DNA of 64,000 nt. It comes from Dendrobates tinctorius (taxonomy: Eukaryota). The position numbers and the translations under genes are program-made. The stretch is from contig NW_027361737.1 of assembly GCF_039654945.1 (NCBI RefSeq), positions 7,440,001-7,504,000 on the forward strand. Direction: 5' to 3'. How positions within the stretch are numbered: position 1 is the stretch's first letter; each line of letters opens with the position of its first letter. Shown in pieces: positions 11,681 through 33,200 of the stretch. The notes under the pieces are model-generated. The model was not told the origin of the DNA. It saw nothing but the letters and a program-made list of their open reading frames with translations, and ran no database searches.

Positions 11681-14600
11681 GTACCTCCCCCTTGAGGAGG
11701 GGTCACCGAACCCTCATCCACGCCACCAGGGCGATCAGGGTGAGCCCGATGAAAGGCACGCACCAATCTTTTGGCATGAATATCAGAGGCAGAGACCCAG
11801 GAATTATCCTCCTGACCATAACCCTTCCACTTAACCAAATACTGGAGTCTCCGTCTAGCCAGACGGGAATCCAGTATCTTCTCTACCTCATATTCCATGT
11901 TACCTTCAACTAATACAGGGTCCGGAGGTGCCACCCCAGGGATAACTGGTTCAACAAACCTCTTCAACAAGGACATATGAAACACATTATGAATTTTAAA
12001 TGTGACAGGAAGAGCCAAATGAAAAGAGACCGGATTAATAATCTCCAAAATCTTGTAAGGTCCAATAAATCTAGGCTTAAACTTAGGAGAAGCCACCTTC
12101 ATAGCGATATTATTTGATGATAACTAAACCATATCACCAACCTTAAACTGGGGACCAATGGTCCTATGTCAGTTGGAAAACCGCTGGGCCTTTTCCTGGG
12201 AGAGAGATAACTTATCTACCACTTGGTCCCAGATCTGGTGCATTCTCTCCACCACAGTGTCAACACCTGGGCAGGCAGAGGACTCCACCTGCCCTGAAGA
12301 AAATCGAGGATGAAACCCAAAGTTACAAAAAAAGATGACATCAAAGTGGCAGAACTAGCTCTATTATTTAAAGCAAATTCAGCCAAGGGCAAAAATGAAA
12401 CAAACCCAATCATCCTGATCAGCGGAAATAAAACATCTCAAATACGACTCCAAAGTCTGGTTTGTTCTCTCCGTCTGCCCATTGGTCTGAGGGTGAAAAG
12501 CAGAGGAGAAGGACAACCGAATTCCCAGCTTGGAACAGAAAGTCCTCCAAAATCTAGGCACAAACTGATCTCCTCTGTCAGATACAATGTTCTCAGGAAT
12601 CCCGTGCAAGCGAACCACCTGTTGCAAAAACAGGGGCACCAACTCAGAGGAAGATGGCAACTTAGGGAGTGGTACAAGATGAACCATCTTAGAGAACCTA
12701 TCACAAATCATCCAAATAACAGTCATTCTCTGAGAGACAGGCATATCAGAGATGAAATCCATTGAAATATGGGTCCATGGCCTCCTGGGGATCGGCAAAG
12801 GCATCAACAACCCACTAGAGTGAGAACAAGGTTTAGACTGGGAGCAAGTCCCACAGGACTGCACAAAATTCCTGACATCACGAGACAAGGCGGGCCACCA
12901 AAAAAGACCGACTCACCAGATCTCTAGTACCAAAAATACCTGGATGACCAGCCAATGCAGAGCAATGAACTTCAGACATCACTCTCTTCTTCCACTGGTC
13001 AGGAACATACAACTTTCCACTGGGACAGCGCTCAGGTTTGTCCTCCTGGAACTCTTCCAGAGCATGTCTCAAATCGGGCAAGATGGCAGAAAAAACTACC
13101 CCTTCGCCTAAGATGGTAGCAGGCTTGGTCACCACAGGAGAATCAGCAAAGAAGTTCCTAGAGAGGGCGTCTGCCTTGACATTCTTAGTGCCAGGAAGAA
13201 AAGAGACCACAAAATCAAAACGTGTAAAAAACAAGGCCCACCTAGCCTGTCTAGGGTTCAAGCGTTTGGCCGACTCCAGGTAAATCAAATTCTTGTGGTC
13301 AGTGAGGACCACGACTTGGTGTTTAGCTCCCTCCAACCAATGTCTCCACTCCTCAAATGCCCATTTCATGGCTAACAGTTCCCGATTCCCCACATCATAA
13401 TTACGTTCAGATGGAGAGAACTTTCGGGAAAAGAAAGCACAGGGATTCATTTTATATGTTGCAGGATCCTTTTGGGACAAAACAGCTCCTGCATCAACCT
13501 CAGAAGCGTCCACCTCTACCTGGAACGGGAGTGAAACATCAGGTTGCCGCAAAACCGGGGCAGAAGTGAATCTTCACTTCAGCTCCTGAAAGGAAGAAAC
13601 AGCCTCCGGAGACCAATTCAACACATCAGCACCCTTCCTAGTCAGATCAGTCAATGGCTTGGCAATACTAGAAAATTTTGCTATAAATTTCCGATAAAAA
13701 TTAGCAAAACCCAAAAACTTCTGGAGGGCCTTAAAAGAAGTGGGCTGAACCCAATCATAAATGGCCTGTACCTTGGCCGGGTCCATTTCAATAGTTGACG
13801 GAGACAAAATAAATCCCAAAAATGAAATCCTCTGTACCCCAAAAAGGCATTTCGATCCTTTGACATACAGGGAATTCTCCCTCAAGATCCAGAACACAGT
13901 CCGAAAATGTTCCACATGAGAATCCCAATCCTTGGAGAAGATCAAAATATCATCCAGATAGATAATCAAAAATTTATCCACAAAGTCTCGGAAAATGTCG
14001 TTCATGAAGCACTGGAAGACAGAAGGGGCATTAGTGAGCCCAAAAGGCATCACCAGGTACTCAAAATGTCCCTCCGGAGTATTAAACGCCATCTTCCATT
14101 CATCCCCATGCTTAATGCGGACAAGATTATACGCCCCCCTGAGGTCAAGCTTGGTAAACCAGCAAGCACCTTTAACTCTGGAAAATAGATCCGAAATCAG
14201 GGGTAACGGATACTGATATTTAATAGTAATTTTGTTGAGGGCACAATAATCAATACAAGGCCTTAATGAACCATCCTTTTTGGCCACGAAAAAAAAAACA
14301 GCACCTAAGGGTGAAGAGGATGGTCTAATATGACCCTTCTCCAATGCCTCTTTAATATAGGATCGCATAGCCTCGTGCTCGGGTACAGATAAATTGAAGA
14401 GCCGACCCTTGGGAAATTTACACCCCGGGCTCAGTTCAATTGCACAGTCATAACTCCTATGAGGAGGCAAAGACGCAGACTCATTCTCACTAAATACATC
14501 ATAAAAGTCCGCCAAATAGTCAGGAACATCATGCGACTGAGGAGAGGTGGAAAAAACCGGAGCCTCACTAAGGGCACACCGACAACCCCAACTCACCACA

Positions 14601-15738
14601 GACACAGACTTCCAATCCAAAACTGGATTATGAATTTGCAACCAGGGAAACCCCAGAACAATGGTATCATGCAAATTATGCAACACCAAAAATCTGCAAT
14701 TTTCTTGATGGTCTGGGGCGACCCGCATTACCACCTGGGTCCAAAACTGAGGTTTATTTTTCGCCAAAGGAGTAGCATCAATCCCCCTCAAAGGGATAGG
14801 CGTCCACAGAGGTGTCATCGGAAATCCACAACGTTTAGCAAAATCCAAGTCCATTAGGTTCAGGGCTGCTCCCGAATCCACATAAGCCTTGGCGGAAAAT
14901 GTGGACAGGGAGCAAATCAGAGTAATTGCCAGAAGAAACTTAGGTTGAACACCACCCACAGAAAATGTGTGTGCAAAACGTTTCTCTCGTTTAGGACAGA
15001 CAGAAATAATAAGCGAGGCATCTCCACAAAAAGAAACAGCTTATTACGCCTTCTGAACTCCTGACGTTGCTCCCTGGACAAAACTCTATCACATTGCATA
15101 GGTTCAGACACTGGTTCAACAGGTGGTAACACCTCTCGTGCAGTCCTGCGTTCACGTAAACGCCGATCAACCTGAATGGCTAATGACATAGAATCGTCAA
15201 GACCAGAGGGAACAGGAAATCCCACCATAGTATCTTTTACGGCTTCTGACAAACCCTTCCGAAAGAGAGCAGCCAAGGCATTATCATTCCAAGTAGTAAG
15301 GACCGCCCACTTTTGGAATTTTTCACAGTACAATTCTGCAGAATCTCGACCCTGGCTCAATGCCAACAGGGTCATTTCAGCCTGATCAATAGCATTAGGT
15401 TCGTCATACAACAACCCCAAGGCTTGAAAAAATGCGTTCACATTAGTCAGAATAGGATCATCTGGTTTCAAAGAAAACGCCCAATCCTGGGGATCGCCAC
15501 GCAGCAAAGAGATGACAATTTTAACCTGCTGCGCGGAGCTCCCTGACGAGTTAGGCTTCAAGTCAAAAAATAATTTACAATTATTTTTGAAATTCAAAAA
15601 TTAAGACCGATCCCCAAAAAACACATCAGGAGTAGGGATCTTTGGTTCAGCAGCATGTGAATGAGCAAGGTAGGCGGAAATTCCCCACACTTCCACAGTG
15701 AGCTGCGCCACACGATCATACAATTGCTTTATCTCCAT
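11566..15738 (-). pseudogene. Gypsy gag-pol with C-terminal chromodomain; several stops and frameshifts
   Basis: ORF pieces: 14917-15597 (gag), 13574-14959 (PR/RT), 12878-13552 (RH), 12379-12888 (IN core), 11566-12102 (GPY/F plus EYEVEKILDSR..YLVKWKGY..NSW chromodomain). Confidence 0.93.
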
Positions 15739-15850
15739 TGAGAGAAAAAAATTCCCCCTACGGCCTCAGAGATATAGAGGAAAAAATATACACACTTTTT
15801 TTTTTTTTTACAATTCTTTCCTGCTATTGAGTACCCTAGGATCTGCGGTA

Positions 15851-15862
15851 TGGCGGGTGATT
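15851..15862 (-). promoter_or_regulatory. Self-priming primer binding site, Gypsy copy 2
   Basis: 11/12 inverted complement of LTR 16489-16500, which lies 26 nt downstream of minus-strand TATAA (16526-16522). Confidence 0.72.
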
Positions 15863-15863
15863 C

Positions 15864-16660
15864 TGTTCTGAATGATTCACCGTAGGAGGCAAAAACAGAA
15901 ATACTAGCTAAGTCCAGAAAACCAGAGAAGTTGGCAGCTATCAGATTGCAGACCCCTGAACCTAACAACAACAACTAGCAGTAGCCGTGGGGGGTTCCTA
16001 CGGTGCCCTAGACCCCTCGATCACAGCCGGAGAACTACATAGCCTAAAGACAGAAAGGGAAATCTAAACTGCCTCAGAGCAGACCCCAAAGCAATAGGCA
16101 GCCCCCAACATATAATGACGGTGAAGCAAGATGAAAAAACTCTCACACAGATAGAAAGATAGGCTGAGCAAACGATGGGGCCCAAGCTAACTAAATAGGA
16201 CAGGATAGAAAAGCTGCTGTCTGCAATCCGCCAAAACCCTCTCAAAACAAGAGCCAACAGACTGATAGGGAAAAAAGCCCTGAAGACGCTAGGCTTCAAA
16301 AAGACTATATCAGTACTCAGGTATCTTCTGAAGACAGAGCAAAAAGGAATTCAGCTCACCCAGCAGGGAAAGGCAGAAATCCAGAAAAACAAGGCAAAAC
16401 AAAACCAAAGCACAAATGCAAAAGCAGAGCAGAAAACTTAGCTTTTGAGGAGCAGGAATCAGACTGGTCTCCAAGAATCCCTCAGAGAAATCACCCGCAA
16501 GGCAGAAGGGCGTCAGCTGCCTTATATCCAGTTAGCAATTCCAGTCACCCAGTCATCATCATTCTGCTCAGGTGCTTTGTAATCAGCCTCACTACCTTCC
16601 TTCACCAGAAGAGGGAGTTCATCAGACCTCAATGGTGAAGGGGAAAATGAACTCACAACA
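15864..16660 (-). repeat. 5' LTR of Gypsy copy 2
   Basis: Direct repeat of 10886-11680. Confidence 0.95.
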
Positions 16661-16709
16661 GGTCTTGCTTGAAGCCGGTCCCTGGTGCAAAAAAGGTTGG
16701 GGACCACTA
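16661..16709 (+). mobile_element. Right end of a MER1/Charlie-like hAT MITE split by Gypsy copy 2 (left part about 10560-10885)
   Basis: Removing the LTR element restores CCATGGAAGAATGGTCTTGCTTGAAGCCGGTCCCTGGTGCAAAAAAGGTTGGGGACCACT, which resembles the Charlie/MER1 terminus. Confidence 0.65.
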
Positions 16710-17039
16710 GTGTAGGGGATCTGGGGCCCCGGCAGAAAAAAATGTACACTATGATTTCGCAGCCTATGCTGCATTTCTGTGCCTGCTGTGCAGAGCGAAG
16801 CACATATTGGGCCCGCCTCCCTGCCTGCAGCCAGTCACAGAGTGTATTGCTTCAGACTAGTTCAGTCCCGCCCCTTCCCTGAGCCCTCGCTGTCTATTAG
16901 CTCTCTCAGAGCTGCCTGCCACATGGAGACTCTGGGAAATGTAGTTCCTGGAGGGGTGTGTCTTTGAGGGGGTGTGTCTTTGAGGGGGCCCCGTTTAAAA
17001 GTTTGCTATGGGGCCCAATCAGTTCTAGTTACGCCCCTG

Positions 17040-17268
17040 ATTGAAGTCGATGCATTAGCTGCCATCATCCGACAACGGCTTCAATTTGTTCGTCCCGCAG
17101 CAGTGGAGTACGGCGAGCTCCTACAAAGCTGCACATAAAGGACTGTTCCCTGGTAAAACTGGGGGATACTGAGTCACTGGTGCTCGCAGCAGGCACAGAA
17201 TCCCCACGTCCTCTCCTTGCAGAAACTCCACGCCCACGACCACGTGCCTTACTCCCTGCCTTCTTTAT
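17040..17268 (-). pseudogene. hAT transposase copy A, N-terminal part (start codon mutated ATG>ATA)
   Basis: Homologous to 20324-about 20600. Confidence 0.85.
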
Positions 17269-18939
17269 CTTGGTAGACTGATAAAGATAGGCAGAAAAGT
17301 ACTAAGGGTTTAGTATGCTTATTCCTGAACAGCTGCTAACAGGTATAAGAAGCACTAATTTTATAAAGTGTGGACTAGACTTTAATAGCTAATGTGGCCT
17401 ACACAACTGTAAAGTGGAGTGTTTGGTGAACTTTATTAACTTTTTTTCACAAAAAGACACTGGATGTGCCCAAAGATGTAAAACCGATAGTATCACAAAC
17501 TTTTTGTAGCTATTACAATGCAGGAAGGTAACCTACAATGCAATAGATGAGGCTCCAAAAAATAGGCTAATATTAATCTGGCTGGGGTTGCAGGGCACAA
17601 GCCAGCAGCAAGGCTCCTCTATCTACTCCTATATAGTGTTTGCAAATATTCTAGCTGGATACGGATGGAACCACACTAATAGGAGAAAATCTGGAAAAAT
17701 GAGCAGCACTAATGCAAAAAAGTACAATGTATGAGGCAGTGACGCACGCTGAGCGGACTACAACCAGAGGTGGCTGCAAAACACACTACAGCGTGAGCTG
17801 CACTCACATGCATAGACCTCGCAGACAGCCGTGAACAGTGCTGCAAGGCTGCAGAAAAGCTCCTCTATCTACTCCTATATAGTGTTTTCAAGCAATCTAG
17901 CTGGATACAGATGGAGCCACACTAATAGGAGAAATCAGGAAAAATGAGCTGCACTAATACAAAAAAGGGCAATGTATGAGGCAGTGACGCACGCTGAGCG
18001 GACTACAACCGGAGGTGGCTGCAGAACACATTACAGCGTGAGCTGCACTCACACACAGAGACGTTGCAGACAGCCATGAACAGCGCTGCAAGGCAAAAGA
18101 AAGCTTCTCACACAGCGGTTTCTAAAGTAGCCTGGGTAAAGCACAATAAAGCAATCGCTAGCTCAAACTGTCCCTCGAAGTCAGAACAGCAGTGTCCTGT
18201 CCCTAAGTAAATTCACAGCAGCAGGAACCAAAAATGGCGGCTTTTATAGTGCATCATGACATCATTTCAGCAGCCAATCACAGCCATGCCATTAGTTAAC
18301 ATGCCTAACATGCACAACAGGATGTGCCCACACTTCTTAGGATTCCTCATTGGCTGAATAAAATCAAACTGGCTCATTGCATTATAGGAACTTCTGATTC
18401 CGGTATTCGATATTCTAAAAGTATCGGAACTCCAATTCTGCGAATATTGGCCGATACCCGATATTGCAGTATTGGAATGCTCAACACTAGTGCTGAATAC
18501 TGGACACTACCAGGAAATCAAGTCCTCTGTCCCCATGTAAGTCCTTCCATTCTGGGCTGGTCTAAACTATTAACTCAGTTTATCCCTAGTAATTACCTGT
18601 TGCTGTTCAAAATACAACTTCATCACATGACAATGCAAATTACTAAACATGCAATACTGTAAATGTGCAAAACAGCAAAATCATAATTCAGCACAGATTC
18701 CTCAAGTGATGTGCACAGCAACTCTACTTCTTTACACCTGCATAGGGGAAACCTGTTGAAAGACAATTGGTACGAGTCATGTAATTACTAGTGTTGAGCA
18801 TTCCGATACCGCAAGTATCGGGTATCGGCCGATATTAGCGGTATCGGAATTCCGATACTGACTTCCGATACTTTTGTCATATCGGATTCCGGAATCGGAA
18901 TCGGAAGTTCCCATCATGCTATGAGCCTGCTTGCTTTGA

Positions 18940-19080
18940 TTAAGCCAATGGGAATCCTCCGAAGTGTGGGCACATCCTGTTAGGCATGTAGGCATGTTAA
19001 CTATTGGCATGGCTGTGATTGGCTGCCGAAATGATGTCATGATGCACTATAAAAGCCACCGCAGCCGCCATTTCTGGTCA
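18940..19080 (+). promoter_or_regulatory. Putative Pol II promoter of hAT-B (CCAAT boxes, CRE-like TGATGTCA, TATAAAAG 19048-19055, YY1-like GCCGCCATTT)
   Basis: The motif cluster is conserved in copy A on the minus strand (about 18230-18355). Confidence 0.6.
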
Positions 19081-19219
19081 CTCTGCTGTGAATTCAGTTA
19101 GGGACAGGCTGCTGTAGAAGACTGTGAGGGACAGTTAGAAATAGCGATTCCACCAAACATCTAGTGCTTTACCCAGGCTACATAAACCACCACTGTAGCC
19201 TTCTTTGCCCTAGCAGCAG

Positions 19220-19970
19220 TGTTCACAGCTGTCTGCAAGGGCTGTGTGAGTGCAGCTCACGCTGTGGAGTGGGTCCTGCAGCCACGTCAGGCTGTAGGCC
19301 ACCCAGTGTGATCACTGCTGCCTCATACATCTTTTATTTTTTGAGCTGCATTTTTTACATAATTTCAATCTAGTGTGCTTCCATCCGTATCCATATACGT
19401 TGGTTGCAAACACTAGTAGTAGACAGCGGAGCCTTTCTGCAGCCTTTCAGTGCTAGTGTCCACTTTGCTGCACTGTTCACGGCTGTCAGAGAGGTCTCTG
19501 ACTGTGTGTGAGTGCAGCTCACGCTGAGTAGTGTGTCCTGCAGCTACGTCTGGCTGTAGGACGCTCAGCGTGCGTCAGTGCCTCACACATATTTTTATTT
19601 GAGTGCAGCTCATTTTTTCTTCTATTAGTGTGCATCCATCAGTCTCCATCTACGGTGGTTGCAAACACTATATAGGAGTACACAGCGGAGCCTTTCTGCA
19701 GCCTGTCAGTGCCAGTGCCCACTTAGCTGCACTGTTGACGGCTGTCTGAGAGGTCTCTGACTGTGTGTGAGTGCAGCTCACGCTGAGTAGAGTGTCCTGC
19801 AGCTACGTCTGGTTGTAGGACGCTCAACGTGCGTCACTGCCTCACACATATTTGTCTTTGAGTGCAGCTCATTTTTTCTTCTCCTATTAGTGTGCATCCA
19901 TCCGTATTCATCAACATTGGTTGGTTGCAAACACTATATAGGAGTAGATAGAGGAGCCTTTTTTTCTGGC
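19220..19970 (+). repeat. About 260-bp tandem repeat x3 in the hAT-B 5' region (about 245 bp x2 in copy A, 17620-18090)
   Basis: TGAGTGCAGCTCACGCTG at about 19247, 19509 and 19768. Confidence 0.8.
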
Positions 19971-20323
19971 TTGTGCCCTGCCGGCGCAGCCAGATTAGTA
20001 TTACCCAATTTTTTTGGACCTCATCTTTTGCATTGTAGGTTACCTGCCTGCATTGTAATAGCTCCAAAAAGTTGGTGATACTATCAGTTTCAATTCTTTG
20101 TTCACATACTTTGAGTTTGTTTCCAACAAAGAAACCACAAAAAAAGTTCACCAAACACTACATTTGGAACTTGTGTAGGCCACATCAGCTCCTATTAAAG
20201 TGTAGTCCACACACACACACTTCATAAAATTAGTGTTTCTTGTACCTGTAACCAGCTGTTCAGGAATAAGCACACTAAGGCCCCCCTTTGTACTTTTCTG
20301 CCTATCTTAAGCAGTCTGGCAAG

Positions 20324-23300
20324 ATGAAGAAGGCAGGGAGTAAGGCGCGTGAGCGTGGGCGTGGAGTTTCAGCAGGGAGAGGACGTGGGGATTCTGCAGG
20401 GAGAGGACGTGGGGATTCTGCAGGTAGAGGACGTGGGGATTCTGGGCCTGCTGCGGGCACCAGTGGATCAGCATCCCCCAGTTTTAGCAGGCAACAGTCC
20501 TTTATGTGCAGCTTTGTAGGACCTCAACGTACCCCACTGCTGCGGGAGAAACAAATTGAAGCCGTTGTCGGATGGATGGCAGCTAACGCATCAACTTCAA
20601 TTACTTCCGCATCCTCTCAGGATCAGAGCACCGAAGAGCAACCATCTGTCTCTTCACCACCTGCCAAAGTGCCCAGGCAGTCAGAGAGACATGGACAGGA
20701 GCCATCACAGTCTCTACTTCTGTTCTCGGAATCTGTTGGCTTGGAAAGAGGGGGCCAGCCAAGCAGCATTCCTGAATGTGAAGAAGAGGGAGTATGCAGT
20801 GATGCGCAACTTCTTTGTCCCTCTGAATCTGAAGAGGCGAATGGGCCAGTGCCTATGGTCAGCACACCTCAGTACGCATCAGATGATGACGAGACTCAGT
20901 TGCCACTTTCTGGTGCGTACGGTGCTGGCGAGACAACCCCGGAGAAGCAGCTGTTTGAAGAGGGGAGGGAAGATGATGAGGTCCTTGACCCATCATGGCG
21001 TGAGGAACAGGAAGGTGGTGGGAGCAGCTCGGAGGAAGAGATTCCCCTACCGGCCAAAACAGGAGGCAGAGGGAGGGGGAAGACTTGGTTGCCTGTACCC
21101 TCCACTTCGGCACCCGTTAGGAGCATTCCTCATTCCAAAGGCAAACCGGGCGCTCCCAAGAGTTGCAGTGCGTGGTCCTTTTTTGACACAGTTGCAGATG
21201 ACATTTGCTTTGTCAAATGCAAGCTGTGTCATCAGATAGTCAAAAGAGGGAGAAATGTCAGCAACCTCAATACCACAAATATGTGGAAACATGTGCGCAC
21301 CAAGCACGAGTTGGAGTTGCAGAGACACCCTGAAGACGTAGGCCAACGTACAGCACCACCTACCACCTCTTCAGTTCGTGTTGGGGCCTCTTCCTCCAGC
21401 TCACACACTGCTGGTTCGGCTTCCTCACAGGATCGCCAAGGAAGAACCTCTGCCACTGTTGTCCGGAGACCCTGTCAGACTCCACCCATAGCAGCACGTT
21501 CCCATCCATCACAGCCATCGGTAGCACAGGCATGGGATAAAAGGCGCCCTTACTCGGCAAACCATCCCCGAGCACAGTCTCTGAATGCTGGCATTGCCAA
21601 ACTTCTGGCAGTTGAAATGCTGTCATTCAGGCTGGTGGACACTGACACCTTCCGGGACTTAATGGCATTGGCAGTCCCCCAATACAACGTGCCCAGCCGC
21701 TTTTATTTCAGCAGGCAAGCCGTCCCTGCCCTGCAGAAACATGTTGAGGGCAAAATAAAACATGCGCTACTAAACGCCGTTAGTAGCAAGGTCCACCTGA
21801 CCACTGATGCGTGGACCAGTAACCATGGACAGGGACGATACCTTTCCCTCACTGCCCACTGGGTCAATGTTGTGGAGCCGGGTACAGATCTGGAGAGTGG
21901 CGCTGTACGTGTTCTTCCAACGCCACGGATTGCAGGACTCCAGTCTGTACACATAGACTCCTCCTCCTACTCAAGTTCCTCAGAAACAGCAGAGCAGGAG
22001 CCTGTTACGACCGAGATGAGCACAGCCGTGGCCAAACGTCAACAGGCTGTACTCAAATTAATTTCTTTGGGGAATCGAAGCCACACAGCGCAGGAGCTCT
22101 GGAATGCTATCAAGCTGGAGAGCGATGTGTGGTTTGGGCCAGGGAATCTCCAGCCGGGCTTGGTAGTGTGTGACAATGGCCGAAATCTGGTGGCAGCTCT
22201 TGGCCTAGGCAACCTCACACACATCCCATGTCTGGCACATGTGCTTAACTTGGTCGTGCAGAGCTTTCTGAGGGACTATCCGGATCTTGATGCACTGTTG
22301 CACAAGGTCCGCATAGAGTGCGCTCACTTGCGACGTTCCAGCACGGCAAGATCGCGCCTCGCTGCTCTGCAGCGACAATTTGGCCTTCCGGAACATCGCA
22401 TCATATGTGACCTACCCACCCGGTGGAATTCAACGTTACATATGTTGGAGCGGTTGTGTGAGCAGCAGGCAGCAGTCATGGAGTACCAGCTGCATCAGGC
22501 GCAAACAAGTCGCACTGTGCGCCGTTCACACTTCAGCACCATTGAGTGGGCCTCTATGAAGGACATCTGCCTCGTTTTGCGTGCCTTCGATGAATCCACG
22601 CGGATGGCGAGTGCAGATGATGCACTAGTCAGCATGACTGTCCCCCTTATCTACCTGCTTCAACAAACACTGCAAGCACTAAGGGATGAGGTTTCGGAAG
22701 AGGTGGAGGATGAGGAGTCCCAAATGCCATCTGCTTCTGGACAGTCTGCGCTACGTGTTTCCTCACAAAGGCATAGGCAGGGGACACTTTGTGAGGAGGA
22801 TGAGGAGGAGTCGATGGAGGAGGAAGACATCTCTCCAGAGGAGGGAGGTACAAAAACCTCTACTCAGTATGTACAGCGAGGGTGGGGTGATGCAGAGCAG
22901 GCCGAGGTCACGCCTCAAACAGGGGACAGCGGTTCTTTGGCAGTTGGGAGTCTGCAGCACATGGTTGATTTCATGCTGCAGTGCCTGAGAAACGACCGCC
23001 GCATCGCCCACATTCTCGTCTCGGCTGATTATTGGGTGTACACCCTCCTAGATCCTCGCTACCGGGACAGCGTACAAAGGCTCATACCAACGTTGAACCG
23101 GGAGCGTAAACTGCGGGAGTACGAAGAGTCACTGGTGCAGTCCATAATGTTTTCCATTCCACCCGACAGCATTGTTGCTAGTGCTTTACAAAGCAGCTCT
23201 GTGCGTCGAGGCAGTGGAGGAAACTCTGCACAAAGAGGGAGCAGAGGCAGTGCCGCAGCACAAGGCAAGACCACTATGGCCCAAATGTGGCAAAGTTTTG

Positions 23301-23659
23301 TGTGTCCACCACAATTGTCTACACCATCAGCGACGCCTCGAGTCAGCAGGAGGCAACGCTTCCGTCAGATGGTGTCAGACTACATGTCTTGCCCTGTCGC
23401 TGTACTCCCAGATGGCTCTTCCCCCTTCAAGTTTTGGGTCTCTAAGCTGGATACATGGCCAGAGCTTAGCCAGTATGCATTGGAGGTGCTGGCTTGCCCT
23501 GCTGCCAGTGTATTATCGGAACGTGTCTTTAGTGCCGCAGGTGGTGTACTAACAGACCGTCGCACGCGACTATCTTCCGATAATGTTGACCGGCTGACTT
23601 TTCTGAAAATGAACAAGGCCTGGATCTCCAAAGACTTTGCCATTCCTCTTACAGACTAA
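20324..23659 (+). CDS. Intact hAT transposase (1111 aa): BED zinc finger, DDE core, C-terminal hATC dimerisation domain
   Basis: WSFF..CKLC..TTNMWKHVRTKH (BED), LTTDAWT, VCDNGRN, CLAH, TRWNST and SERVFS. Preceded by a pyrimidine tract plus CAG (ending 20314) that is conserved in copy A and is a probable splice acceptor. Confidence 0.95.
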   Translation: MKKAGSKARERGRGVSAGRGRGDSAGRGRGDSAGRGRGDSGPAAGTSGSASPSFSRQQSFMCSFVGPQRTPLLREKQIEAVVGWMAANASTSITSASSQDQSTEEQPSVSSPPAKVPRQSERHGQEPSQSLLLFSESVGLERGGQPSSIPECEEEGVCSDAQLLCPSESEEANGPVPMVSTPQYASDDDETQLPLSGAYGAGETTPEKQLFEEGREDDEVLDPSWREEQEGGGSSSEEEIPLPAKTGGRGRGKTWLPVPSTSAPVRSIPHSKGKPGAPKSCSAWSFFDTVADDICFVKCKLCHQIVKRGRNVSNLNTTNMWKHVRTKHELELQRHPEDVGQRTAPPTTSSVRVGASSSSSHTAGSASSQDRQGRTSATVVRRPCQTPPIAARSHPSQPSVAQAWDKRRPYSANHPRAQSLNAGIAKLLAVEMLSFRLVDTDTFRDLMALAVPQYNVPSRFYFSRQAVPALQKHVEGKIKHALLNAVSSKVHLTTDAWTSNHGQGRYLSLTAHWVNVVEPGTDLESGAVRVLPTPRIAGLQSVHIDSSSYSSSSETAEQEPVTTEMSTAVAKRQQAVLKLISLGNRSHTAQELWNAIKLESDVWFGPGNLQPGLVVCDNGRNLVAALGLGNLTHIPCLAHVLNLVVQSFLRDYPDLDALLHKVRIECAHLRRSSTARSRLAALQRQFGLPEHRIICDLPTRWNSTLHMLERLCEQQAAVMEYQLHQAQTSRTVRRSHFSTIEWASMKDICLVLRAFDESTRMASADDALVSMTVPLIYLLQQTLQALRDEVSEEVEDEESQMPSASGQSALRVSSQRHRQGTLCEEDEEESMEEEDISPEEGGTKTSTQYVQRGWGDAEQAEVTPQTGDSGSLAVGSLQHMVDFMLQCLRNDRRIAHILVSADYWVYTLLDPRYRDSVQRLIPTLNRERKLREYEESLVQSIMFSIPPDSIVASALQSSSVRRGSGGNSAQRGSRGSAAAQGKTTMAQMWQSFVCPPQLSTPSATPRVSRRQRFRQMVSDYMSCPVAVLPDGSSPFKFWVSKLDTWPELSQYALEVLACPAASVLSERVFSAAGGVLTDRRTRLSSDNVDRLTFLKMNKAWISKDFAIPLTD

Positions 23660-23871
23660 ATTAGTGGTTGGCAACTGTATCCAGGTCTGCTGGTATGTTC
23701 ATTTTTCTACCACCTGAACTATAATCCCTGTGCTTCAACACAGCCAGTTGTCGCTCAGATGTGTTGTCTGCACAGAGAAACACACTAGCTCCTGTGTTAG
23801 TGGGGTTCAGTAACGCCAGCTGATCCCCTGCTGTGTGGACGGCAAAGTCACCAGCTCCATCAACATTCAAA

Positions 23872-24288
23872 CCACTATTGATTTTTAACCGTGCCCAACT
23901 TAGGTCTCTGGCTCCACTGTCTCTACTATTTCCCCTGACCTCCAACCCCGCCATCTACATCTCTGAAGTGGCGTCAGCACAATCTACACTTGTTCCTGTG
24001 TTCCTGTGGCTCAGTCCCATCAGTTTATCCCCTGATGTGTGTCTGGCAAGGTCTCCTGCTCTGTCCACATTCCCATAACCAGTAGTGGGAATGAGGACAG
24101 AGCTGGCGAACTTGCCGGACAAACATCAGGGGATCAACTGACGGGACTGAGCACCAGTAACACAGGAACAAGTGTAGATTGTGCTGACGCCACTTCAGAG
24201 ATGTAGCTGGCGGGGTTGGAGGCCAGGGTAAATAGTAGAGACAGTGGAGCCAGAGGCCTAAGTGGAGCATGGTTAGAATCAGTAGTAG
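23872..24288. repeat. Long inverted repeat 1 (about 205-bp arms, about 10-nt loop)
   Basis: Centre CTGTCCACATTCCCA-TAACCAGTAG-TGGGAATGAGGACAG; arms match outward. Confidence 0.9.
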
Positions 24289-24340
24289 TCAACAACCTCC
24301 ATAAAAACCGCTGCCCATTGGCCTCTGCATGCGGCATGCG

Positions 24341-26815
24341 TAATCCTGGGCTCCAACAGTGTCAGTTGGTGTTCAGAAGTGTCGTCTCCACAGAGCCAAA
24401 CACATTCGTTCAAGTGTTAGTGGGGTTCAGCACTGCCAGCTGTTCCCCTGCTGTGGAGATGGCAAGTCTCCTGCTGCCTACACTTGCCAAAATCCAGTAG
24501 GCCCCAGCCTGCTCCACGCCTAATCCTGGGCTCCAACAGCGTCAGTTGGTGTTCAGAAGTGACATCTCCACAGAGCCAAACACATTCGTTCGAGTGTTAG
24601 TGGGTTTCAGCACTGCCAGCTGTTCCCCTGCTGTGGAGATGGCAAGTCTCCTGCTGCCTTCACCTGCCAAAAGCAACAGGCCCCAGCCTGCTCCTCGCCT
24701 AATCCTGGGCTCCAACAGCGTCAGTTGGTGTTCAGAAGTGTCATCTCCACAGAGCCAAACACATTCGTTCAAGTGTTAGTGGGGTTCAGCACTGCCAGCT
24801 GTTCCCCTGCTGTGGAGATGGCAGTCTCTCCTACTGTCACCTCATTCCAAATACAGTAGGCCTCTGCCTACACCCTCCTATTTCCTGGGCTTCAACACAG
24901 CCAGTTGTAGCTCGGAAGTGTCGTCCACACGGAAAGAGATACTTGCTCCCGTGTCTCAGTGGGGTTCAGTAACGTCAGCTGATCCCCTGCTGTGTGGATG
25001 GCAGTCTCTCCTGCTGTCACCACATTCCAAATACAGTAGGCCTCTGCCTACACCCTCCTATTTCCTGGGCTTCAACACAGCCAGTTGTAGCTCGGAAGTG
25101 CCGTCCACACGGAAAGAGATACTTGCTCCCGTGTCTCAGTGGGGTTCAGTAACGTCAGCTGATCCCCTGCTGTGTGGATGGCAGTCTCTCCTGCTGTCAC
25201 CACATTCCAAATACAGTAGGCCTCTGCCTACACCCTCCTATTTCCTGGGCTTCAACACAGCCAGTTGTAGCTCGGAAGTGCCGTCCACACGGAAAGAGAC
25301 ACTTGCTCCCGTGTCTCAGTGGGGTTCAGTAATGTCAGCTGATCCCCTGCTGTGTGGATGGCAGTCTCTCCTGCTGTCACCACATTCCAAATACAGTAGG
25401 CCTCTGCCTACACCCTCCTATTTCCTGGGCTTCAACACAGCCAGTTGTAGCTCGGAAGTGCCGTCCACACGGAAAGAGATACTTGCTCCCGTGTCTCAGT
25501 GGGGTTCAGTAACGTCAGCTGATCCCCTGCTGTGTGGATGGCAGTCTCTCCTGCTGTCACCACATTCCAAATACAGTAGGCCTCTGCCTACACCCTCCTA
25601 TTTCCTGGGCTTCAACACAGCCAGTTGTAGCTCGGAAGTGCCGTCCACACGGAAAGAGATACTTGCTCCCGTGTCTCAGTGGGGTTGAGTAACGTCAGCT
25701 GATCCCCTGCTGTGTGGATGGCAGTCTCTCCTGCTGTCACCACATTCCAAATACAGTAGGCCTCTGCCTACACCCTCCTATTTCCTGGGCTTCAACACAG
25801 CCAGTTGTAGCTCGGAAGTGCTGTCCACACGGAAAGAGACACTTGCTCCCGTGTCTCAGTGGGGTTCAGTAACGTCAGCTGATCCCCTGCTGTGTGGATG
25901 GCAGTCTCTCCTGCTGTCACCTCATTCCAAATACAGTAGGCCTCTGCCTACACCCTCCTATTTCCTGGGCTTCAACACAGCCAGTTGTAGCTCGGAAGTG
26001 CCGTCCACACGGAAAGAGACACTTGCTCCCGTGTCTCAGTGGGGTTCAGTAACGTCAGCTGATCCCCTGCTGTGTGGATGGCAGTCTCTCCTGCTGTCAC
26101 CTCATTCCAAATACAGTAGGCCTGTGCCTACACCCTCCTATTTCCTGGGCTTCAACACAGCCAGTTGTAGCTCGGAAGTGCCGTCCACACGGAAAGAGAT
26201 ACTTGCTCCCGTGTCTCAGTGGGGTTCAGTAACGTCAGCTGATCCCCTGCTGTGTGGATGGCAGTCTCTCCTGCTGTCACCTCATTCCAAATACAGTAGG
26301 CCTCTGCCTACACCCTCCTATTTCCTGGGCTTCAACACAGCCAGTTGTAGCTCGGAAGTGCCGTCCACACGGAAAGAGACACTTGCTCCCGTGTCTCAGT
26401 GGGGTTCAGTAACGTCAGCTGATCCCCTGCTGTGTGGATGGCAGTCTCTCCTGCTGTCACCACATTCCAAATACAGTAGGCCTCTGCCTACACCCTCCTA
26501 TTTCCTGGGCTTCAACACAGCCAGTTGTAGCTCGGAAGTGCCGTCCACACGGAAAGAGATACTTGCTCCCGTGTCTCAGTGGGGTTCAGTAACGTCAGCT
26601 GATCCCCTGCTGTGTGGATGGCAGTCTCTCCTGCTGTCACCACATTCCAAATACAGTAGGCCTCTGCCTACACCCTCCTATTTCCTGGGCTTCAACACAG
26701 CCAGTTGTAGCTCGGAAGTGCCGTCCACATGGAAAGAGACACTTGCTCCCGTGTCTCAGTGGGGTTCAGTAACGTCAGCTGATCCCCTGCTGTGTGGATG
26801 GCAAAGTCTCCTGCT
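24341..26815 (+). repeat. 180-bp tandem arrays: about 3 units of type 1, then 11 near-identical units of type 2
   Basis: GGGGTTCAGTAACGTCAGCTGATCCCC recurs every 180 bp from 24961 to 26761. Confidence 0.97.
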
Positions 26816-26831
26816 GCCTACACAGTCGTAC

Positions 26832-27237
26832 CACTACTGATTTTTAACCGTGCTCCAATTAGGCCTGTGGCTCCACTGTCTCTCGTATTTCCCCTGTCCT
26901 CCAATCCCGCCAGTTACAGCTCCGAAGTGGCGTCTGCACAATCCACACTTGTTCCTGTGTTACAGGTGTTCAGTCCGGTCAGTTAATCCCCTGATGTGTG
27001 TCCAGCAATGTCGCCTGCTCTGTCCACATTCCCTTTATGGGAATGTGGACAGAGCAGGCGACATTGCCGGACACACATCAGGGGATTAACTGACCGGACT
27101 GAACACCTGTTACACAGGAACAAGTGTGGATTTTGCAGACGCCACTTCGGAGCTGTAACTGGCGGGGTTGGAGGACAGGGGAAATACGAAAATCAGTGAA
27201 GCCACAGGCCTAAGTGGAGCTTGGTTAAAATTAGTAG
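26832..27237. repeat. Long inverted repeat 2 (about 200-bp arms, 5-nt loop)
   Basis: Centre TGTCCACATTCCC-TTTAT-GGGAATGTGGACA; arms match outward. Confidence 0.9.
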
Positions 27238-27797
27238 AAGTCTACAGCCGATCTTAAAATTTCTTCAATGCAGCCTCAGCCTGCTCCGTGCTTGTCCCTG
27301 GGCTTCAACACAGCCAGTTGTTGCTCGGAAGTGCCGTCTTCACAGAGTAAAACACTAGCTCCTGTGTTTGTGGGGTTCAGTAACGTCAGCTGTTCCCCTG
27401 CTGTTTTGATGGCAATCTGTCCTGCTGCCTCCCAATTGACAGCACATCAGGCCTCAGCCTGCTAAGTGCTTGTCCTGGGCTCCAACATCGCCAGTTGCTG
27501 CTCATAACTGACTTTGGCACGGGTACTCCCTCCTGCCCAGCTTGGTTCCAGCCCTGCCTGCTGTTTCCGGGAAGTGTCAATGTCAGTTTGCCACCCCAAG
27601 TTGCCATGTCGTGTTGCGGTTGGGTTAGCCGAGGCTAGGGTGCCAGCAGTTTAGGTGCTTCCTATGTGGACTGCGGGTTCTGGTAAGAAAGGCTTGTTCC
27701 GTAGTGCCAGTAGGACAAGCACCCCCTGTAGGACTGTGTGATTCGGTAACTGCGGCCAGCTTGCGGCATGCCAACTTTGCTTTTCAGGGGTAACTTC

Positions 27798-28826
27798 TGC
27801 TACCCCTCCGGGTTCCAGCACCGTCAGCTGGTTCTCGTCAGAACCTTTGGCCTAGGTGCCTCCATCTCGGTATCCGAGTTCCGGCAACGTCTGCTGGTCC
27901 TTGGTAGTGCTTTGTAGCACAGGTACCTCCTGCTTAGTAACCGGGTTCCAGCACCGTCAGCTGGTCCTCGGTTGTGCCATTGGCTCTTATTCCTTCTGCT
28001 GCCCCTCCGGGTGCCAGCACTGTCAGCTGGTCCTCGCTATTTCCATTTGCTCTTGCAGCTTATGCTACCCCTCCGGGTTCCAGCACCGTCAGCTGGTTCT
28101 CGTCAGAGCCTTTGGCCTAGGTGCCTCCATCTCGGTATCCGAGTTCCGGCAACGTCTGCTGGTCCTTGGTAGTGCTTTGTAGCACAGGTACCTCCTGCTT
28201 AGTAACCGGGTTCCAGCACTGTCAGCTGGTCCTCGGTTGTGCCATTGGCTCTTATTCCTTCTGCTGCCCCTCCGGGTGCCAGCACTGTCAGCTGGTCCTC
28301 GCTATTTCCATTTGCTCTTGCAGCTTATGCTACCCCTCCGGGTTCCAGCACCTTCAGCTGGTTCTCGTCAGAGCCTTTGGCCTAGGTGCCTCCATCTCGG
28401 TATCCGAGTTCCGGCAACGTCTGCTGGTCCTTGGTAGTGCTTTGTAGCACAGGTACCTCCTGCTTAGTAACCGGGTTCCAGCACCGTCAGCTGGTCCTCG
28501 GTTGTGCCATTGGCTCTTATTCCTTCTGCTGCCCCTCCGGGTGCCAGCACAGTCAGCTGGTCCTCGCTATTTCCATTTGCTCTTGCAGCTTATGCTACCC
28601 CTCCGGGTTCCAGCACCGTCAGCTGGTTCTCGTCAGAGCCTTTGGCCTAGGTGCCTCCATCTCGGTATCCGAGTTCCGGCAACGTCTGCTGGTCCTTGGT
28701 AGTGCTTTGTAGCACAGGTACCTCCTGCTTAGTAACCGGGTTCCAGCACCGTCAGCTGGTCCTCGGTAGTGCCATTGGCTCTTGTTCCTTCTGCTGCCCC
28801 TCCGGGTGCCAGTACAGTCAGCTGAT
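27798..28826 (+). repeat. 265-bp tandem repeat (about 3.9 near-identical units)
   Basis: TGCTACCCCTCCGGGTTCCAGCAC at 27798, 28063, 28328 and 28593. Confidence 0.97.
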
Positions 28827-29159
28827 TCAAGAGGACAAAGAACAGGAAGACAACCACCAAGATGCAGAACAACAAGAGAGAGAAGACAAAGAAGCATAAA
28901 AAAACAAAGCAGAAGAACATTAAGCATAAGACTAATACTCTGAGCAAATGATATTATCTTATTTATAAGCAGAAGAAGACTAAGCAGTGTATGGGGGTGA
29001 GTCCGTTCCTCCTCGTGGTGCCCCTGGAAAAGGCCTGCTGCTGCAGGCCAAACTGAACGCGGACAAATCCTGTTGTAAATCTTTTGTGACAGGCAGAACG
29101 GAAGGTGTAAACTTCTAACTTTTCTAGATAACAACTACAGAAATGCCTGACACAAACAA

Positions 29160-29445
29160 GAATATGATGAAGAAGAATAGGAAGAAGATGAAGAAGTTGA
29201 ATATGTAGAATAATAATTGTTGAATAAGAAGAATATGAAGAATGTAAGAAAAGGAAGAAGAAGAAGAATGTAAAAAAAGGAAGTAGAAGAATTTAAAAAA
29301 AGGAAGAAGAAGAATGTAAAAAAAGGAATAAGAAGAATGTAAAAAAAGGAAGTAGAAGAATGTAAAAAAAGGAATAAGAAGAAGAAGAAGGTAAAAAAAG
29401 GAAGAAGAATAAGAAAGAAGAAGAAAGAAGAAAGAAGAAGAAGAC
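29160..29445 (+). repeat. GAA-rich purine tract inside hAT-B
   Basis: Low-complexity AAGAAG/GAATGTAAAAAAAGG units. Confidence 0.9.
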
Positions 29446-29921
29446 ATACATGTCTGGCAAAATATAAATGAGGCTCACATAGTCAATATCTTTGTAACTC
29501 CTAACGTCTTTAAAAAAAAAGTTTAATTCCTGCTATTCCATTTGATTGGGCTAAACCTCTATGGCTTTAATGTCTCCTCCACCTCCCACAATACATTCTA
29601 CATTATTCTTAGTTGTTTTTCTTCATGTAGAATTAACCTACAAGGAAAGAAAGGGTTTTTTTTAATTCCGATATTTTGGCCCCATTGACTTGCATTGGTT
29701 CCCGGTATCGGAATCGGCGATACCGATACTTTTTTTTAAGATCGGCCAATCCATTCCGATCCGATATTTTCAAGTATCGGCTGGTATTGCTCAACTCTAG
29801 TAATTACCAGAAATAATTTTATTCCTAATACATACACACCTGACAGCTTTTTTTGAACCAGCAACAAGTCACCAGCAATGACAGGTTTCTACTTGAGAAC
29901 CAAGATCCATTTTTGCATTAA

Positions 29922-31142
29922 AGCAGTTGTCCAATCCAAATTGATTAGTGTACAGTCACTCTGTGTGACTGCAGACTTATGAATCCCCCCCAGTGCACAG
30001 TGCTTTGCCAGTTTCAGACCTGGGACCAGAAGATATGCATGAGTTATACCATATTATTCAAACTATAAGACGCATTGGACCATAAGAAGCTCCTCAAATT
30101 TTCAGAAGGAAAATGGGGAAAAAAATTAATGCGTCAAATGGGGTCCATCTTACAGTCCTGAATTCATCTTACCCTGGGGGGATCCGCAGCGCTGGTGGCA
30201 GCAAGAGTCAGGCAATTCTGCCAGTGGTCCGATACTGCAGGGCGATGATCTCACTCCCATCCCAGCCTGGTGCGGCAGTTTTGGCAGTGCTTGGTGCTGC
30301 GGGGGACTCTGGCGACATTATGTGAAAGCCTGAAGCCCCTGCAGTTCTATTGCCTTGACGCTTTGGCCTCCGGGAAAATGGCACATGTGCAGATTGAGAT
30401 CTTGGCGAGATCTTGGGAGACAATCTCAATCTGCGCATGCGCCGCCTCCAGTGGCCATTTTCTCGAAGGCCAGATTGATTCCCAAGACACAGATTGAGAT
30501 CTCGTCCCGAGATCTTGGGAGACAAATTCTCTGAGCCAAGATCTCAATCTGCACATGCGCCGCCTTCAGTGGCCATTTTCCTGGAGGCCACAGCATTGAG
30601 GCAATAGAACTGCGGGGATTTGGGCTTTGACATAATGTCGCCAGAGCCCCCCGCAGCACCGAGCACTGACGAAACTGCCACACCATGTCGCTGGAGCCCC
30701 CACAGCACCAAGCACCACCAAAACTGCCACACCAACTGCACAAGGCTGGGATGGGAGCGAGATCATCGTCCTGCAGTGTCGGACTATTGGAAGAATTGTC
30801 CGACTACGGATGCTACCACGCTAACTGTAAGTACACTCCAACTATAAGACGCACCACCTTTTTCTCCCCCAAATTTTGGGGAAAAAAGTGCGTCTTATAG
30901 TCGGAAAAATAAGGTACATACCACAGAATGGCCTTGTTACTAGATGAGGCACTGCCTCGCTCCATACAAGTGTATGGAGCGAGGCCGTGGCCACTGGGCT
31001 GGAGTATGTATAACTCAAACATACCCTCCATGCCTGCATCTGAAACTGGCAAATTCCGGCTGTGCAAAGTGCTGGGGGAATCCATAAGTCTGCATTTAAA
31101 CAGAGGGACAATAGACTTATAGATTTGGAGTGGACAGCCACT
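29922..31142. mobile_element. Kolobok/T2-type MITE (TTAA target) interrupted by a Tc1/mariner-type element
   Basis: TTAA-AGCAGTTGTCCA...TGGACAGCCACT-TTAA, with degenerate inverted arms. Confidence 0.65.
30049..30914. mobile_element. Non-autonomous Tc1/mariner (pogo/Tc2-like) element with a large internal palindrome
   Basis: TA-CCATATTATTCAAACTATAAGACGCA...TGCGTCTTATAGTCGGAAAAATAAGG-TA. Inverted arms at about 30200-30800. Confidence 0.75.
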
Positions 31143-32550: not shown

Positions 32551-33200
32551 ATAATATCCCACATCATCCCGTCAGCCAGAGCTACCGGACTACTACCCAT
32601 AATATCCCACATCATTCCGTCAGCCAGAGCCACTGGACTACTACCCCTAATATCCCACATCATCGCATCAGCTGGAGCCACGGGACAACTACCACTAATA
32701 TCCCACATCTTCCTGTCAGCCAGAGCTACCAGACTACAACCCATAATATCCCACATCGTCCCATTAGCCAGAGCAACTGGACTACTACCACTAATATCCC
32801 TCATTATCCCATCAGCCAGAGCTACCGGACTACTACCCATAATATCCCACATCATTCCGTCAGCTAGAGCCACTGGACTACTACCCCTAATATCCCACAT
32901 CATCGCATCAGCTGGAGCCACGGGACAACTACCACTAATATCCCACATCTTCCCATCAGCCAGAGCTACCAGACTGCAACCCATAATATCCCACATCGTC
33001 CCATTAGCCAGAGCAACTGGACTACTACCACTAATATCCCTCATTATCCCGTCAGCCAGAGCTACCGGACTACTACCCATAATATCCCACATCATCCCAT
33101 CAGCAAGAGCCACTGGACTACTACTCCTAATATCCCACATCATCCCATCAGCCAGAGACACCGGACAACTACCACTAATATCCCACATCATCCCGTCAGC
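32551..33200 (+). repeat. 48-bp minisatellite (about 13.5 units) with 240-bp higher-order period
   Basis: Unit ATAATATCCCACATCATCCCGTCAGCCAGAGCTACCGGACTACTACCC; variant pattern repeats at 32581, 32821 and 33061. Confidence 0.93.

What the first reader, a model, noticed from the sequence alone, without database searches (positions are those of the whole stretch)
23725..28826. About 50 copies of one covarying stem-loop (5-bp stem, ANNGYCA loop) arrayed downstream of an intact hAT transposase
Seen: the about 205-, 180- and 265-bp arrays differ in length and sequence but share one module: lower stem, often a U.U mismatch, a 5-bp upper stem and a 7-nt loop. Examples: TCAGT-AACGTCA-GCTGA (24966-24982), CCAAC-AGCGTCA-GTTGG (24533-24549), TCAAC-ACAGCCA-GTTGT (25072-25088), CCAGC-ACCGTCA-GCTGG (27948-27964), CCGGC-AACGTCT-GCTGG (27881-27897). 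Stem position 4 switches between G-C and A-T in concert. Several non-WC stem pairs are G.U on the transposase sense strand, but would be A.C on the other strand. Loop length and A..GYCA are kept while the spacers diverge. There are 2 modules per 180/205-bp unit and 4 per 265-bp unit. The diverged copy A keeps the module in the same orientation relative to its ORF (6004-6020, 6073-6089). The module differs from the CCGATAC subterminal motifs at the element ends. It does not match IRE, SRE, SECIS, U1A, IRE1 or tRNA-arm consensus as I know them. Inference: a DNA transposon carrying a selected multivalent RNA element (3' UTR protein-binding, localisation or export array, sponge, or small-RNA precursor), or alternatively a dimeric protein site with a 7-bp spacer. 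I know of no described hAT system like this.
Basis: partly seen in the sequence, partly recalled or inferred. Interest (0 to 1): 0.85.

Follow-up and report, generated by a model that had tools for sequence, protein, structure and literature searches.

The report
Hairpin-core repeat arrays inside frog hAT transposon
About 54 copies of a short hairpin-forming motif fill the 5 kb behind the transposase gene of an 11-kb frog jumping gene; they are real, all descend from one old repeat unit, and carry a moderate sequence signature of folding as sense-strand RNA, but no transcript or function has been shown.

Summary
Window 18789-29799 is an 11,011-bp hAT transposon with an 8-bp target duplication (GTAATTAC), 12-nt terminal inverted repeats and an intact 1111-aa BED/hAT open reading frame (ORF). 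Its 3' non-coding 5.1 kb holds 54 sense-strand modules, plus 4 inverted ones in two palindromes. A degenerate head-to-head copy holds 8 more.

The arrays are not independent. The X, Y (180/205-bp units), W (66-nt monomers of the 265-bp unit) and palindrome-arm modules align over about 60 nt, so they are one ancestral monomer amplified. The effective sample is about 15-20 lineages, not 50.

Pairing is kept (76-83% of cells, against 30-47% with slid partners). Both-sided changes occur at four hairpin pairs and two outer-stem pairs, but the relatedness-robust covariation measures do not beat shuffles.

New here: helices found blind to strand carry 65 G.T against 13 A.C mismatches. Controls give a G.T fraction of 0.47±0.10. 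The sense RNA folds better than shuffles (z -4.3, -5.1); the antisense folds less well.

I favour a sense-strand hairpin, probably in a long 3' UTR (about 0.4). A function-less hairpin-prone satellite is nearly as likely.

The scan already noted this module in two other copies in this genome. Rfam has no match. This is a new variant of a known kind.

The parts
18781..18788 (.). left 8-bp target-site duplication GTAATTAC
   Evidence: Identical 8-mer on both flanks.
18789..29799 (+). element B: complete hAT transposon, 11,011 bp
   Evidence: TIR TAGTGTTGAGCA against TAGAGTTGAGCA (11/12), target duplication, and CGATAC-type subterminal motifs at both ends.
29800..29807 (.). right 8-bp target-site duplication GTAATTAC
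19243..19961 (+). 5' non-coding 259-bp x2.7 tandem array
   Evidence: Tandem Repeats Finder. Sense fold z -5.7.
20324..23659 (+). intact intronless transposase ORF, 1111 aa, with zf-BED and the hAT dimerisation domain
   Evidence: Pfam E 1.5e-08 and 4.7e-14. 79% identity to a Ranitomeya variabilis ZBED-like protein. A single terminal stop.
23715..23882 (+). first repeat unit (B0) with X module 23735-23751 and Y module 23807-23823; the X module starts 76 nt after the stop codon
23883..24278 (.). palindrome P1: two 193-nt arms, 90% complementary, each a diverged repeat unit with decayed modules
24341..24828 (+). 180-bp array a (x2.7); modules CCAAC-AGYGTCA-GTTGG and TCAGC-ACTGCCA-GCTGT
24778..26816 (+). 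180-bp array b (x11.3, 98% alike); modules TCAAC-ACAGCCA-GTTGT and TCAGT-AACGTCA-GCTGA, plus a 10-14-bp outer stem around the Y module
26842..27230 (.). palindrome P2: 192-nt arms, 94% complementary, homologous to P1
27285..27600 (+). single diverged units with modules at 27305, 27377, 27482 and 27548
27794..28824 (+). 265-bp array (x3.9) made of four 66-nt monomers W1-W4, each with CCRGC-ANYGTCW-GCTGG
28827..29450 (+). purine-rich (AAG)n tract between the arrays and the 3' subterminal region
5908..18489 (-). copy A: older head-to-head copy, 74-86% identical, ORF broken, interrupted between 9899 and 17040, cut off at 5908
   Evidence: blastn. TIR and stop counts.
5910..6720 (-). copy A 205-bp array (x4.0) with 8 modules, same orientation relative to the ORF

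Best explanation
Shown: the modules are the best-kept part of one ancestral repeat monomer of about 70-100 nt. That monomer was amplified into several tandem arrays in the 3' non-coding 5 kb of an autonomous hAT transposon.

The core is an interrupted inverted repeat: a 4-6-bp lower stem, a kept T.T mismatch, a 4-5-bp upper stem and a 7-nt loop (ACCGYCA). In the 180-bp units a further 10-14-bp outer stem encloses the second module.

Inferred: the pairing is kept as an intramolecular hairpin of the sense strand. It most probably forms in an RNA that runs from the intronless transposase ORF through the arrays, because no canonical poly(A) signal intervenes. There the many copies would act as a multivalent cis element, for example binding a host RNA-binding protein that affects stability, export or localisation of the transposase message.

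The RNA itself, its ends and any such function are not shown.
For: - Element anatomy.
- One monomer family.
- Pairing is 76% of cells for the module and 83% for the whole unit, against 30-47% when partners are slid.
- Both-sided changes are kept at pairs 12/40, 16/36, 18/34 and 21/31 between the X, Y and W families, with G.U intermediates present. Two more lie in the outer stem between the 180a and 180b arrays (CCACAC/GTGTGG against CTCCAC/GTGGAG).
- Stems are more conserved than loops, and loops more than the rest of the unit: 0.88-1.0, 0.77-0.80 and 0.67.
- Strand test: helices of 10 or more R/Y pairs, found blind to strand, hold 65 G.T against 13 A.C (0.83). The direction is the same in all six unit types. 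The 49 control windows give 0.47±0.10 with a maximum of 0.78, and the ORF gives 80:80.
- Base composition predicts no such bias. Complementary substitution classes between family copies are balanced (X11: A<->G 60, T<->C 61).
- Sense RNA z-scores are -4.3 (180b), -3.7 and -5.1 (265), and -2.2 (205). Antisense gives -0.5 to -0.8, -2.3 to -2.9, and +0.3. ORF controls range from -0.1 to -1.8.
- No AATAAA or ATTAAA lies on the sense strand from the stop codon to the element end.
Against: - No transcript evidence. All runs are contigs whose RNA label is a guess.
- Independent events are few. The measures robust to relatedness do not exceed shuffles: pairs with a both-sided change are 6 observed against 5.3 expected, with 212/500 shuffles at least as high; for the whole unit 2 against 1.9, with 364/500.
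- The G.T excess is partly inherited from the ancestral monomer.
- The 180a unit shows no excess stability (z -0.8).
- The palindrome-arm units have let the hairpins decay.
- Other copies of the family skip the 180-bp arrays or join parts differently, so the arrays are dispensable or unstable (joints 23824>26989 and 24289>27041).
- A related hAT family has a 141-bp 3' array with no module and no excess folding.
- Recent within-array substitutions are too few to test.
Confidence: 0.4

Rival explanations
1. Function-less transposon-internal satellite. A monomer that happened to contain a dyad symmetry was amplified by slippage or unequal exchange. The hairpin core looks conserved through shared descent, array homogenisation and palindrome-keeping mutation such as template switching. 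Hairpin-prone units may simply expand more readily.
For: - All modules are homologous over about 60 nt.
- 11 units are 98% alike.
- The robust covariation measures are not above shuffles.
- The region is rich in DNA-level inverted duplications, P1 and P2.
- The arrays vary between copies.
- A related hAT has an unrelated, unstructured 3' array, so array formation there needs no hairpin.
- Internal arrays are known from other DNA transposons (PMC4079207, PMC3879986).
- Template switching can create mirrored multi-base changes in hairpins (PMC8794818).
Against: - It predicts equal G.T and A.C decay. Observed is 65:13, against 0.47±0.10 in controls, with strand-balanced substitution classes.
- It does not explain folding stability that is in excess mainly on the sense strand.
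- It does not explain the T.T mismatch and 7-nt loop length kept across the X, Y and W families.
Confidence: 0.37
2. A double-stranded DNA site for a dimeric protein, with two half-sites 7 bp apart, arrayed to recruit a host factor or the transposase.
For: - The module has a palindromic core, CARC N7 GYTG.
- The Y and W modules contain CAGCTG and TGACG.
- Arrays of host-factor sites inside transposons exist, such as the Su(Hw) sites of gypsy (my own knowledge).
Against: - The half-site sequence differs between families, and each difference is mirrored in the other arm. A dimer that tolerates both forms would not require that.
- The E-box is lost in X (CAGTTG).
- G.T positions and the kept T.T are asymmetric in duplex DNA.
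- The element's likely transposase-binding motifs are the subterminal CGATAC repeats, not the module.
Confidence: 0.07
3. Small-RNA source. The transcribed arrays, and above all the palindromes P1 and P2, fold into double-stranded RNA that is diced into siRNA or feeds piRNA production, silencing the family.
For: - The 192-nt arms are 90-94% complementary and 5-10 nt apart.
- Perfect-hairpin miRNA models score there, though below threshold.
Against: - The 10-12-bp interrupted module hairpins are too short for Dicer or Drosha substrates.
- The Rfam hits are below their gathering scores (54 against 74 bits) and occur on both strands, as expected of any perfect palindrome.
- This reading explains P1 and P2, not the module.
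Confidence: 0.08

Closest known systems
DNA transposons with internal tandem arrays that seed satellites (Tetris foldback element of Drosophila virilis, PMC4079207; DTC84 MITE of the clam Donax, PMC3879986)
   Same: Tandem repeats lie between the ends of a cut-and-paste element. Unit number varies between copies. Inverted duplications lie nearby.
   Different: Here the element is an autonomous hAT with an intact ORF. Several arrays of different period share one hairpin core, and the helices show a sense-strand G.T bias. Spread of the arrays outside the element was not examined.
Xlsirts of Xenopus: a non-coding RNA of tandem repeats that localises by the early (METRO) pathway to germ plasm (summarised in PMC9624338; unit length 79-81 nt from my own knowledge)
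   Same: It comes from a frog, has tandem short units of similar size, and the repeated unit itself is the RNA element.
   Different: No sequence relation was tested or seen. Xlsirts is not known to me as part of a hAT. Transcription and localisation of the present arrays are untested.
Hairpins created and kept by template switching in replication (PMC8794818)
   Same: Mirrored, sometimes multi-base, changes occur in both arms of a short hairpin without stepwise selection.
   Different: Template switching makes Watson-Crick symmetry and predicts no excess of G.T over A.C on one strand.
Minisatellite 'core' sequences shared by arrays of different unit length (Jeffreys and colleagues, my own knowledge)
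   Same: One short core is shared by arrays with different periods.
   Different: Here the sharing is explained by descent from one monomer within a single element, and the core is a dyad, not a G-rich recombination-like motif.

Membership tests
hAT superfamily DNA transposon | 8-bp target-site duplication | tested here: met
   GTAATTAC at 18781-18788 and 29800-29807.
hAT superfamily DNA transposon | short terminal inverted repeats | tested here: met
   12 nt, 11/12 matching.
hAT superfamily DNA transposon | transposase with BED zinc finger and hAT C-terminal dimerisation domain | tested here: met
   PF02892 E 1.5e-08 and PF05699 E 4.7e-14. Full-length relatives of 1133-1145 aa exist.
hAT superfamily DNA transposon | catalytic DDE/RNase-H-like core intact | not tested
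   Only inferred from the uninterrupted ORF and 97% coverage by relatives that carry PF27039.
Transposon-internal satellite or tandem array | head-to-tail units inside the element, with copy number varying between copies | tested here: met
   Tandem Repeats Finder. Contigs of other copies skip or rejoin the arrays. Copy A has 205-bp units where copy B has 180-bp units.
Any described RNA family (Rfam 15) | match at or above the family's gathering score | tested here: not met
   Only sub-threshold miRNA-model hits on the perfect palindromes. Nothing on the modules at E<=1.
Structured RNA supported by covariation | compensatory changes beyond what relatedness gives | tested here: inconclusive
   Cells and score exceed all 500 shuffles, but the two robust measures do not. 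R-scape on many independent copies could not be run.
Structured RNA supported by covariation | the strand that is folded is transcribed | not testable with these tools
   Runs are contigs without strand, and their RNA label is a guess.
ENE-type triple-helix stabiliser with a downstream A-rich tract | U-rich internal loop of about 5+5 nt in a stem | tested here: not met
   The internal loop is 1-2 U.U only, and Rfam gives no hit. An A-rich (AAG)n tract does follow.
Dimeric double-stranded DNA protein site | an invariant half-site, independent of the partner arm | tested here: not met
   Half-sites differ by family and the differences are mirrored.

The most novel reading that the evidence does not exclude
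A cut-and-paste DNA transposon family of frogs carries, in the 3' UTR of its intronless transposase message, a selected array of 50-90 copies of one RNA hairpin. The array recruits a host RNA-binding protein, for example for export, stabilisation or germ-plasm localisation. That would be an RNA-level adaptation of a kind so far described for retroelements and viruses, not for hAT elements.
Probability: 0.33. Interest if true: 0.8.

Novelty: new variant of a known kind. Interest (0 to 1): 0.5.

Why it matters
Internal tandem arrays of DNA transposons are usually treated as junk or as seeds of satellites. Here several arrays of different period keep one hairpin, and the mismatches are of the kind RNA tolerates, on the coding strand only.

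If transcripts confirm this, it would be a rare case of a DNA transposon investing in an RNA cis element. It would also offer a natural multivalent hairpin array for finding its binding protein, in genomes where hAT elements make up hundreds of megabases (255 Mb in Oophaga pumilio, PMC6278860).

If it is not confirmed, the locus remains a clean example of how descent from one monomer plus array amplification can mimic '50 covarying stem-loops'.

Tried and rejected
- Rfam at E<=1 over 18-31 kb gave only sub-threshold miRNA-model hits on the perfect palindromes.
- A metagenome-collection scan for the Y module gave three single chance matches with no homology to the element.
- I tried to fetch DNA around relatives. 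The Ranitomeya record is too large to serve. Other contigs end 50-500 nt after the stop codon. Only L008 reaches an array, and it is unrelated.
- A protein search with the open frame of the 180-bp array, meant to pull array-bearing contigs, found nothing.
- Read laying returned contigs only, so expression, strand and transcript ends could not be read.
- My first shuffle script hung and was replaced.
- Substitutions within the arrays are too few for a test: 17 variant cells in 13 units.
- Readings rejected: tRNA or 5S-derived satellite (no Rfam hit); ENE (loop too small); transposase-binding sites (the subterminal motif is CGATAC-type); a coding function for the 256- and 340-aa frames in the 180-bp array (explained by a period divisible by 3; no homologues).
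Full report
**What is there.** The finding lies in the 3' non-coding part of a complete hAT transposon, window 18789-29799 (11,011 bp).
- The element has 12-nt terminal inverted repeats that match at 11 of 12 positions.
- It has a perfect 8-bp target duplication, GTAATTAC, on both flanks.
- It has clusters of CGATAC-type motifs just inside both ends.
- Its single uninterrupted ORF (20324-23659, 1111 aa) carries a BED zinc finger and the hAT dimerisation domain.
- The ORF is 79% identical to a ZBED-like protein of the poison frog Ranitomeya variabilis.

A second, older copy (A) lies head-to-head with it on the minus strand (18489 down to 5908). It is 74-86% identical, its ORF is broken, and it is interrupted by about 7 kb.

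**The observation.** A strict scan finds 54 modules. A covariance model built from them finds 66:
- 54 on the sense strand between 23718 and 28842;
- 4 inverted ones in the right arms of two 192-nt palindromes;
- 8 in copy A.

Nothing else in the 64 kb matches except one marginal hit. Counts per unit, orientation, the G-C/A-T switch at stem position 4, and the excess of G.U over A.C all check out.

The arrays are not independent inventions of one module.
- The X modules (CAAC/GTTG), Y modules (CAGY/GCTG), the four 66-nt W monomers of the 265-bp unit and the palindrome arms all align over about 60 nt. This includes about 15 nt beyond the hairpin. Everything behind the ORF therefore descends from one monomer.
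- Eleven 180-bp units are 98% alike. The true sample is therefore roughly 15-20 lineages.
- The loop is a conserved sequence, ACCGYCA, eroded at its CpG. Contigs of other copies read C at 28021 and A at 27883, restoring ACCGTCA and CCAGC.
- Between unit lineages, the stems are the most conserved part (0.88-1.0), then the loops (0.77-0.80), then the rest of the unit (0.67).
- In the 180-bp units the predicted sense fold holds more than the two modules. A 10-14-bp outer stem and a 7-bp hairpin form a three-way junction around the Y module.

**Is pairing maintained?** The module helix is paired in 76% of cells, against 30-46% with slid partners. The whole-unit fold is paired in 83%, against 37-47%.
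- Both-sided changes are kept at pairs 12/40 (U-A, U.G, C-G), 16/36 (C-G, G-C), 18/34 (C-G, U-A) and 21/31 (A-U, G.U, G-C).
- Two more are kept in the outer stem between arrays 180a and 180b.
- These changes split by family, so each is probably one event.
- The two measures that resist relatedness are not above shuffles.
- Formally, covariation is suggestive but inconclusive.

**Which strand?** I looked for helices in purine/pyrimidine space, which is blind to the difference between G.T and A.C.
- In helices of 10 or more pairs the arrays hold 65 G.T against 13 A.C (0.83), with the same direction in all six unit types.
- The 49 control windows give 0.47±0.10 (maximum 0.78), and the ORF gives 80:80.
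- Base composition predicts no bias.
- Complementary substitution classes between family copies are balanced, so a strand-biased mutation process is not evident.
- Sense RNA folds better than dinucleotide shuffles (z -4.3 for 180b; -3.7 and -5.1 for 265). The antisense folds less well (-0.5 to -0.8; -2.3 to -2.9). ORF controls are near zero.
- The 180a unit is an exception.
- Part of the G.T excess is inherited from the ancestral monomer, so I rate its weight as moderate.

**Transcription.** No AATAAA or ATTAAA lies on the sense strand between the stop codon and the element end. A message started upstream of the ORF would therefore be expected to include the arrays.

Direct evidence is lacking. 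All runs holding the sequence are served as contigs, and their RNA label is a guess. They do show three things:
- the family is multi-copy;
- array-bearing relatives at 80-95% likeness exist in a second organism;
- some copies skip the 180-bp arrays or join parts differently.

**Relatives.** A hAT family whose cluster representative is 55% identical in protein (contig L008) also starts a tandem array about 118 nt after its stop codon. Its 141-bp unit is unrelated, lacks the module, and shows no excess folding on either strand. Arrays behind the ORF are thus a habit of this clade. The hairpin is particular to this family.

**Reading.**
- The double-stranded dimer-site idea fits poorly, because half-site differences are mirrored and the E-box is lost in X.
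- A sense-strand hairpin, most simply in the 3' UTR RNA, fits the strand bias, the kept T.T mismatch, the fixed loop length and the conserved stems. I give it about 0.4.
- A function-less, hairpin-prone satellite kept by descent, homogenisation and template switching (PMC8794818) is nearly as likely, at about 0.37. The main evidence against it is the strand bias.
- The palindromes may feed small-RNA pathways, but that does not explain the module.

**Known context.**
- Rfam has no matching family.
- Internal arrays in DNA transposons are known (PMC4079207, PMC3879986).
- Tandem-repeat RNAs that localise in frog oocytes are known (Xlsirts, PMC9624338).
- hAT elements are abundant, and transposons are expressed in ova, in a poison frog (PMC6278860).
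- The scan had already noted the same module in two other copies of this genome (s1-376973, s1-382791). The earlier follow-up reached the same structural conclusion.
- This report adds the strand-blind G.T test, the sense/antisense folding contrast, the outer stem and the comparison with a related family.

Noticed in passing
window 1287-1862: Telomere-like TTAGGG/TCAGGG array of about 97 hexamers with 164- and 292-bp higher-order periods. It abuts the N gap 1863-2096 and lies next to an LTR-retroelement pol ORF (2157-4154, minus strand: protease, RT, RNase H).
   Followed up: no
window 19243-19961 (copy A: 17598-18109): The 5' non-coding part of the hAT has its own 259-bp x2.7 tandem array (245 bp in copy A). 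Its sense RNA folds with z -5.7, against -3.7 for the antisense.
   Followed up: partly
window 23883-24278 and 26842-27230: Two homologous near-perfect palindromes (192-193-nt arms, 90-94% complementary, 5-10 nt apart) bracket the 180-bp arrays. Their arms are diverged repeat units. Rfam miRNA models hit them on both strands below threshold, as any perfect hairpin would.
   Followed up: partly
window 28827-29450: A 620-nt purine-rich (AAG)n tract, 49% A on the sense strand, lies between the last array and the 3' subterminal region.
   Followed up: no
window 20360-20444: A 24-nt x3.5 repeat encodes an Arg-Gly-rich N-terminus of the transposase (GRGRGDSA repeats), a composition typical of RNA-binding RGG/RG tracts.
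   Followed up: no
window 27868, 28133, 28398, 28663: Each 265-bp unit holds a perfect small hairpin, CTCGG-TAT-CCGAG, containing CGGTATC. That 7-mer also occurs in both subterminal regions (18805, 18839, 29703, 29719). It has one independent origin and could be chance.
   Followed up: partly
window 18489-18789: Two hAT copies of the same family face each other with their 5' ends only 299 bp apart.
   Followed up: partly
L008 4150-4531: A related hAT, from host DNA in a metagenome assembly, has a 141-bp x2.7+ tandem array starting about 118 nt after its stop codon. The array contains 23-25-nt sub-repeats and is cut off by the contig end.
   Followed up: partly
window 30193-30818; 32552-33685; 59824-60386: A palindromic MITE-like element lies just beyond the hAT. 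There are also further tandem arrays (48/240 bp, 70/140 bp, 21-105 bp) unrelated to the finding.
   Followed up: no
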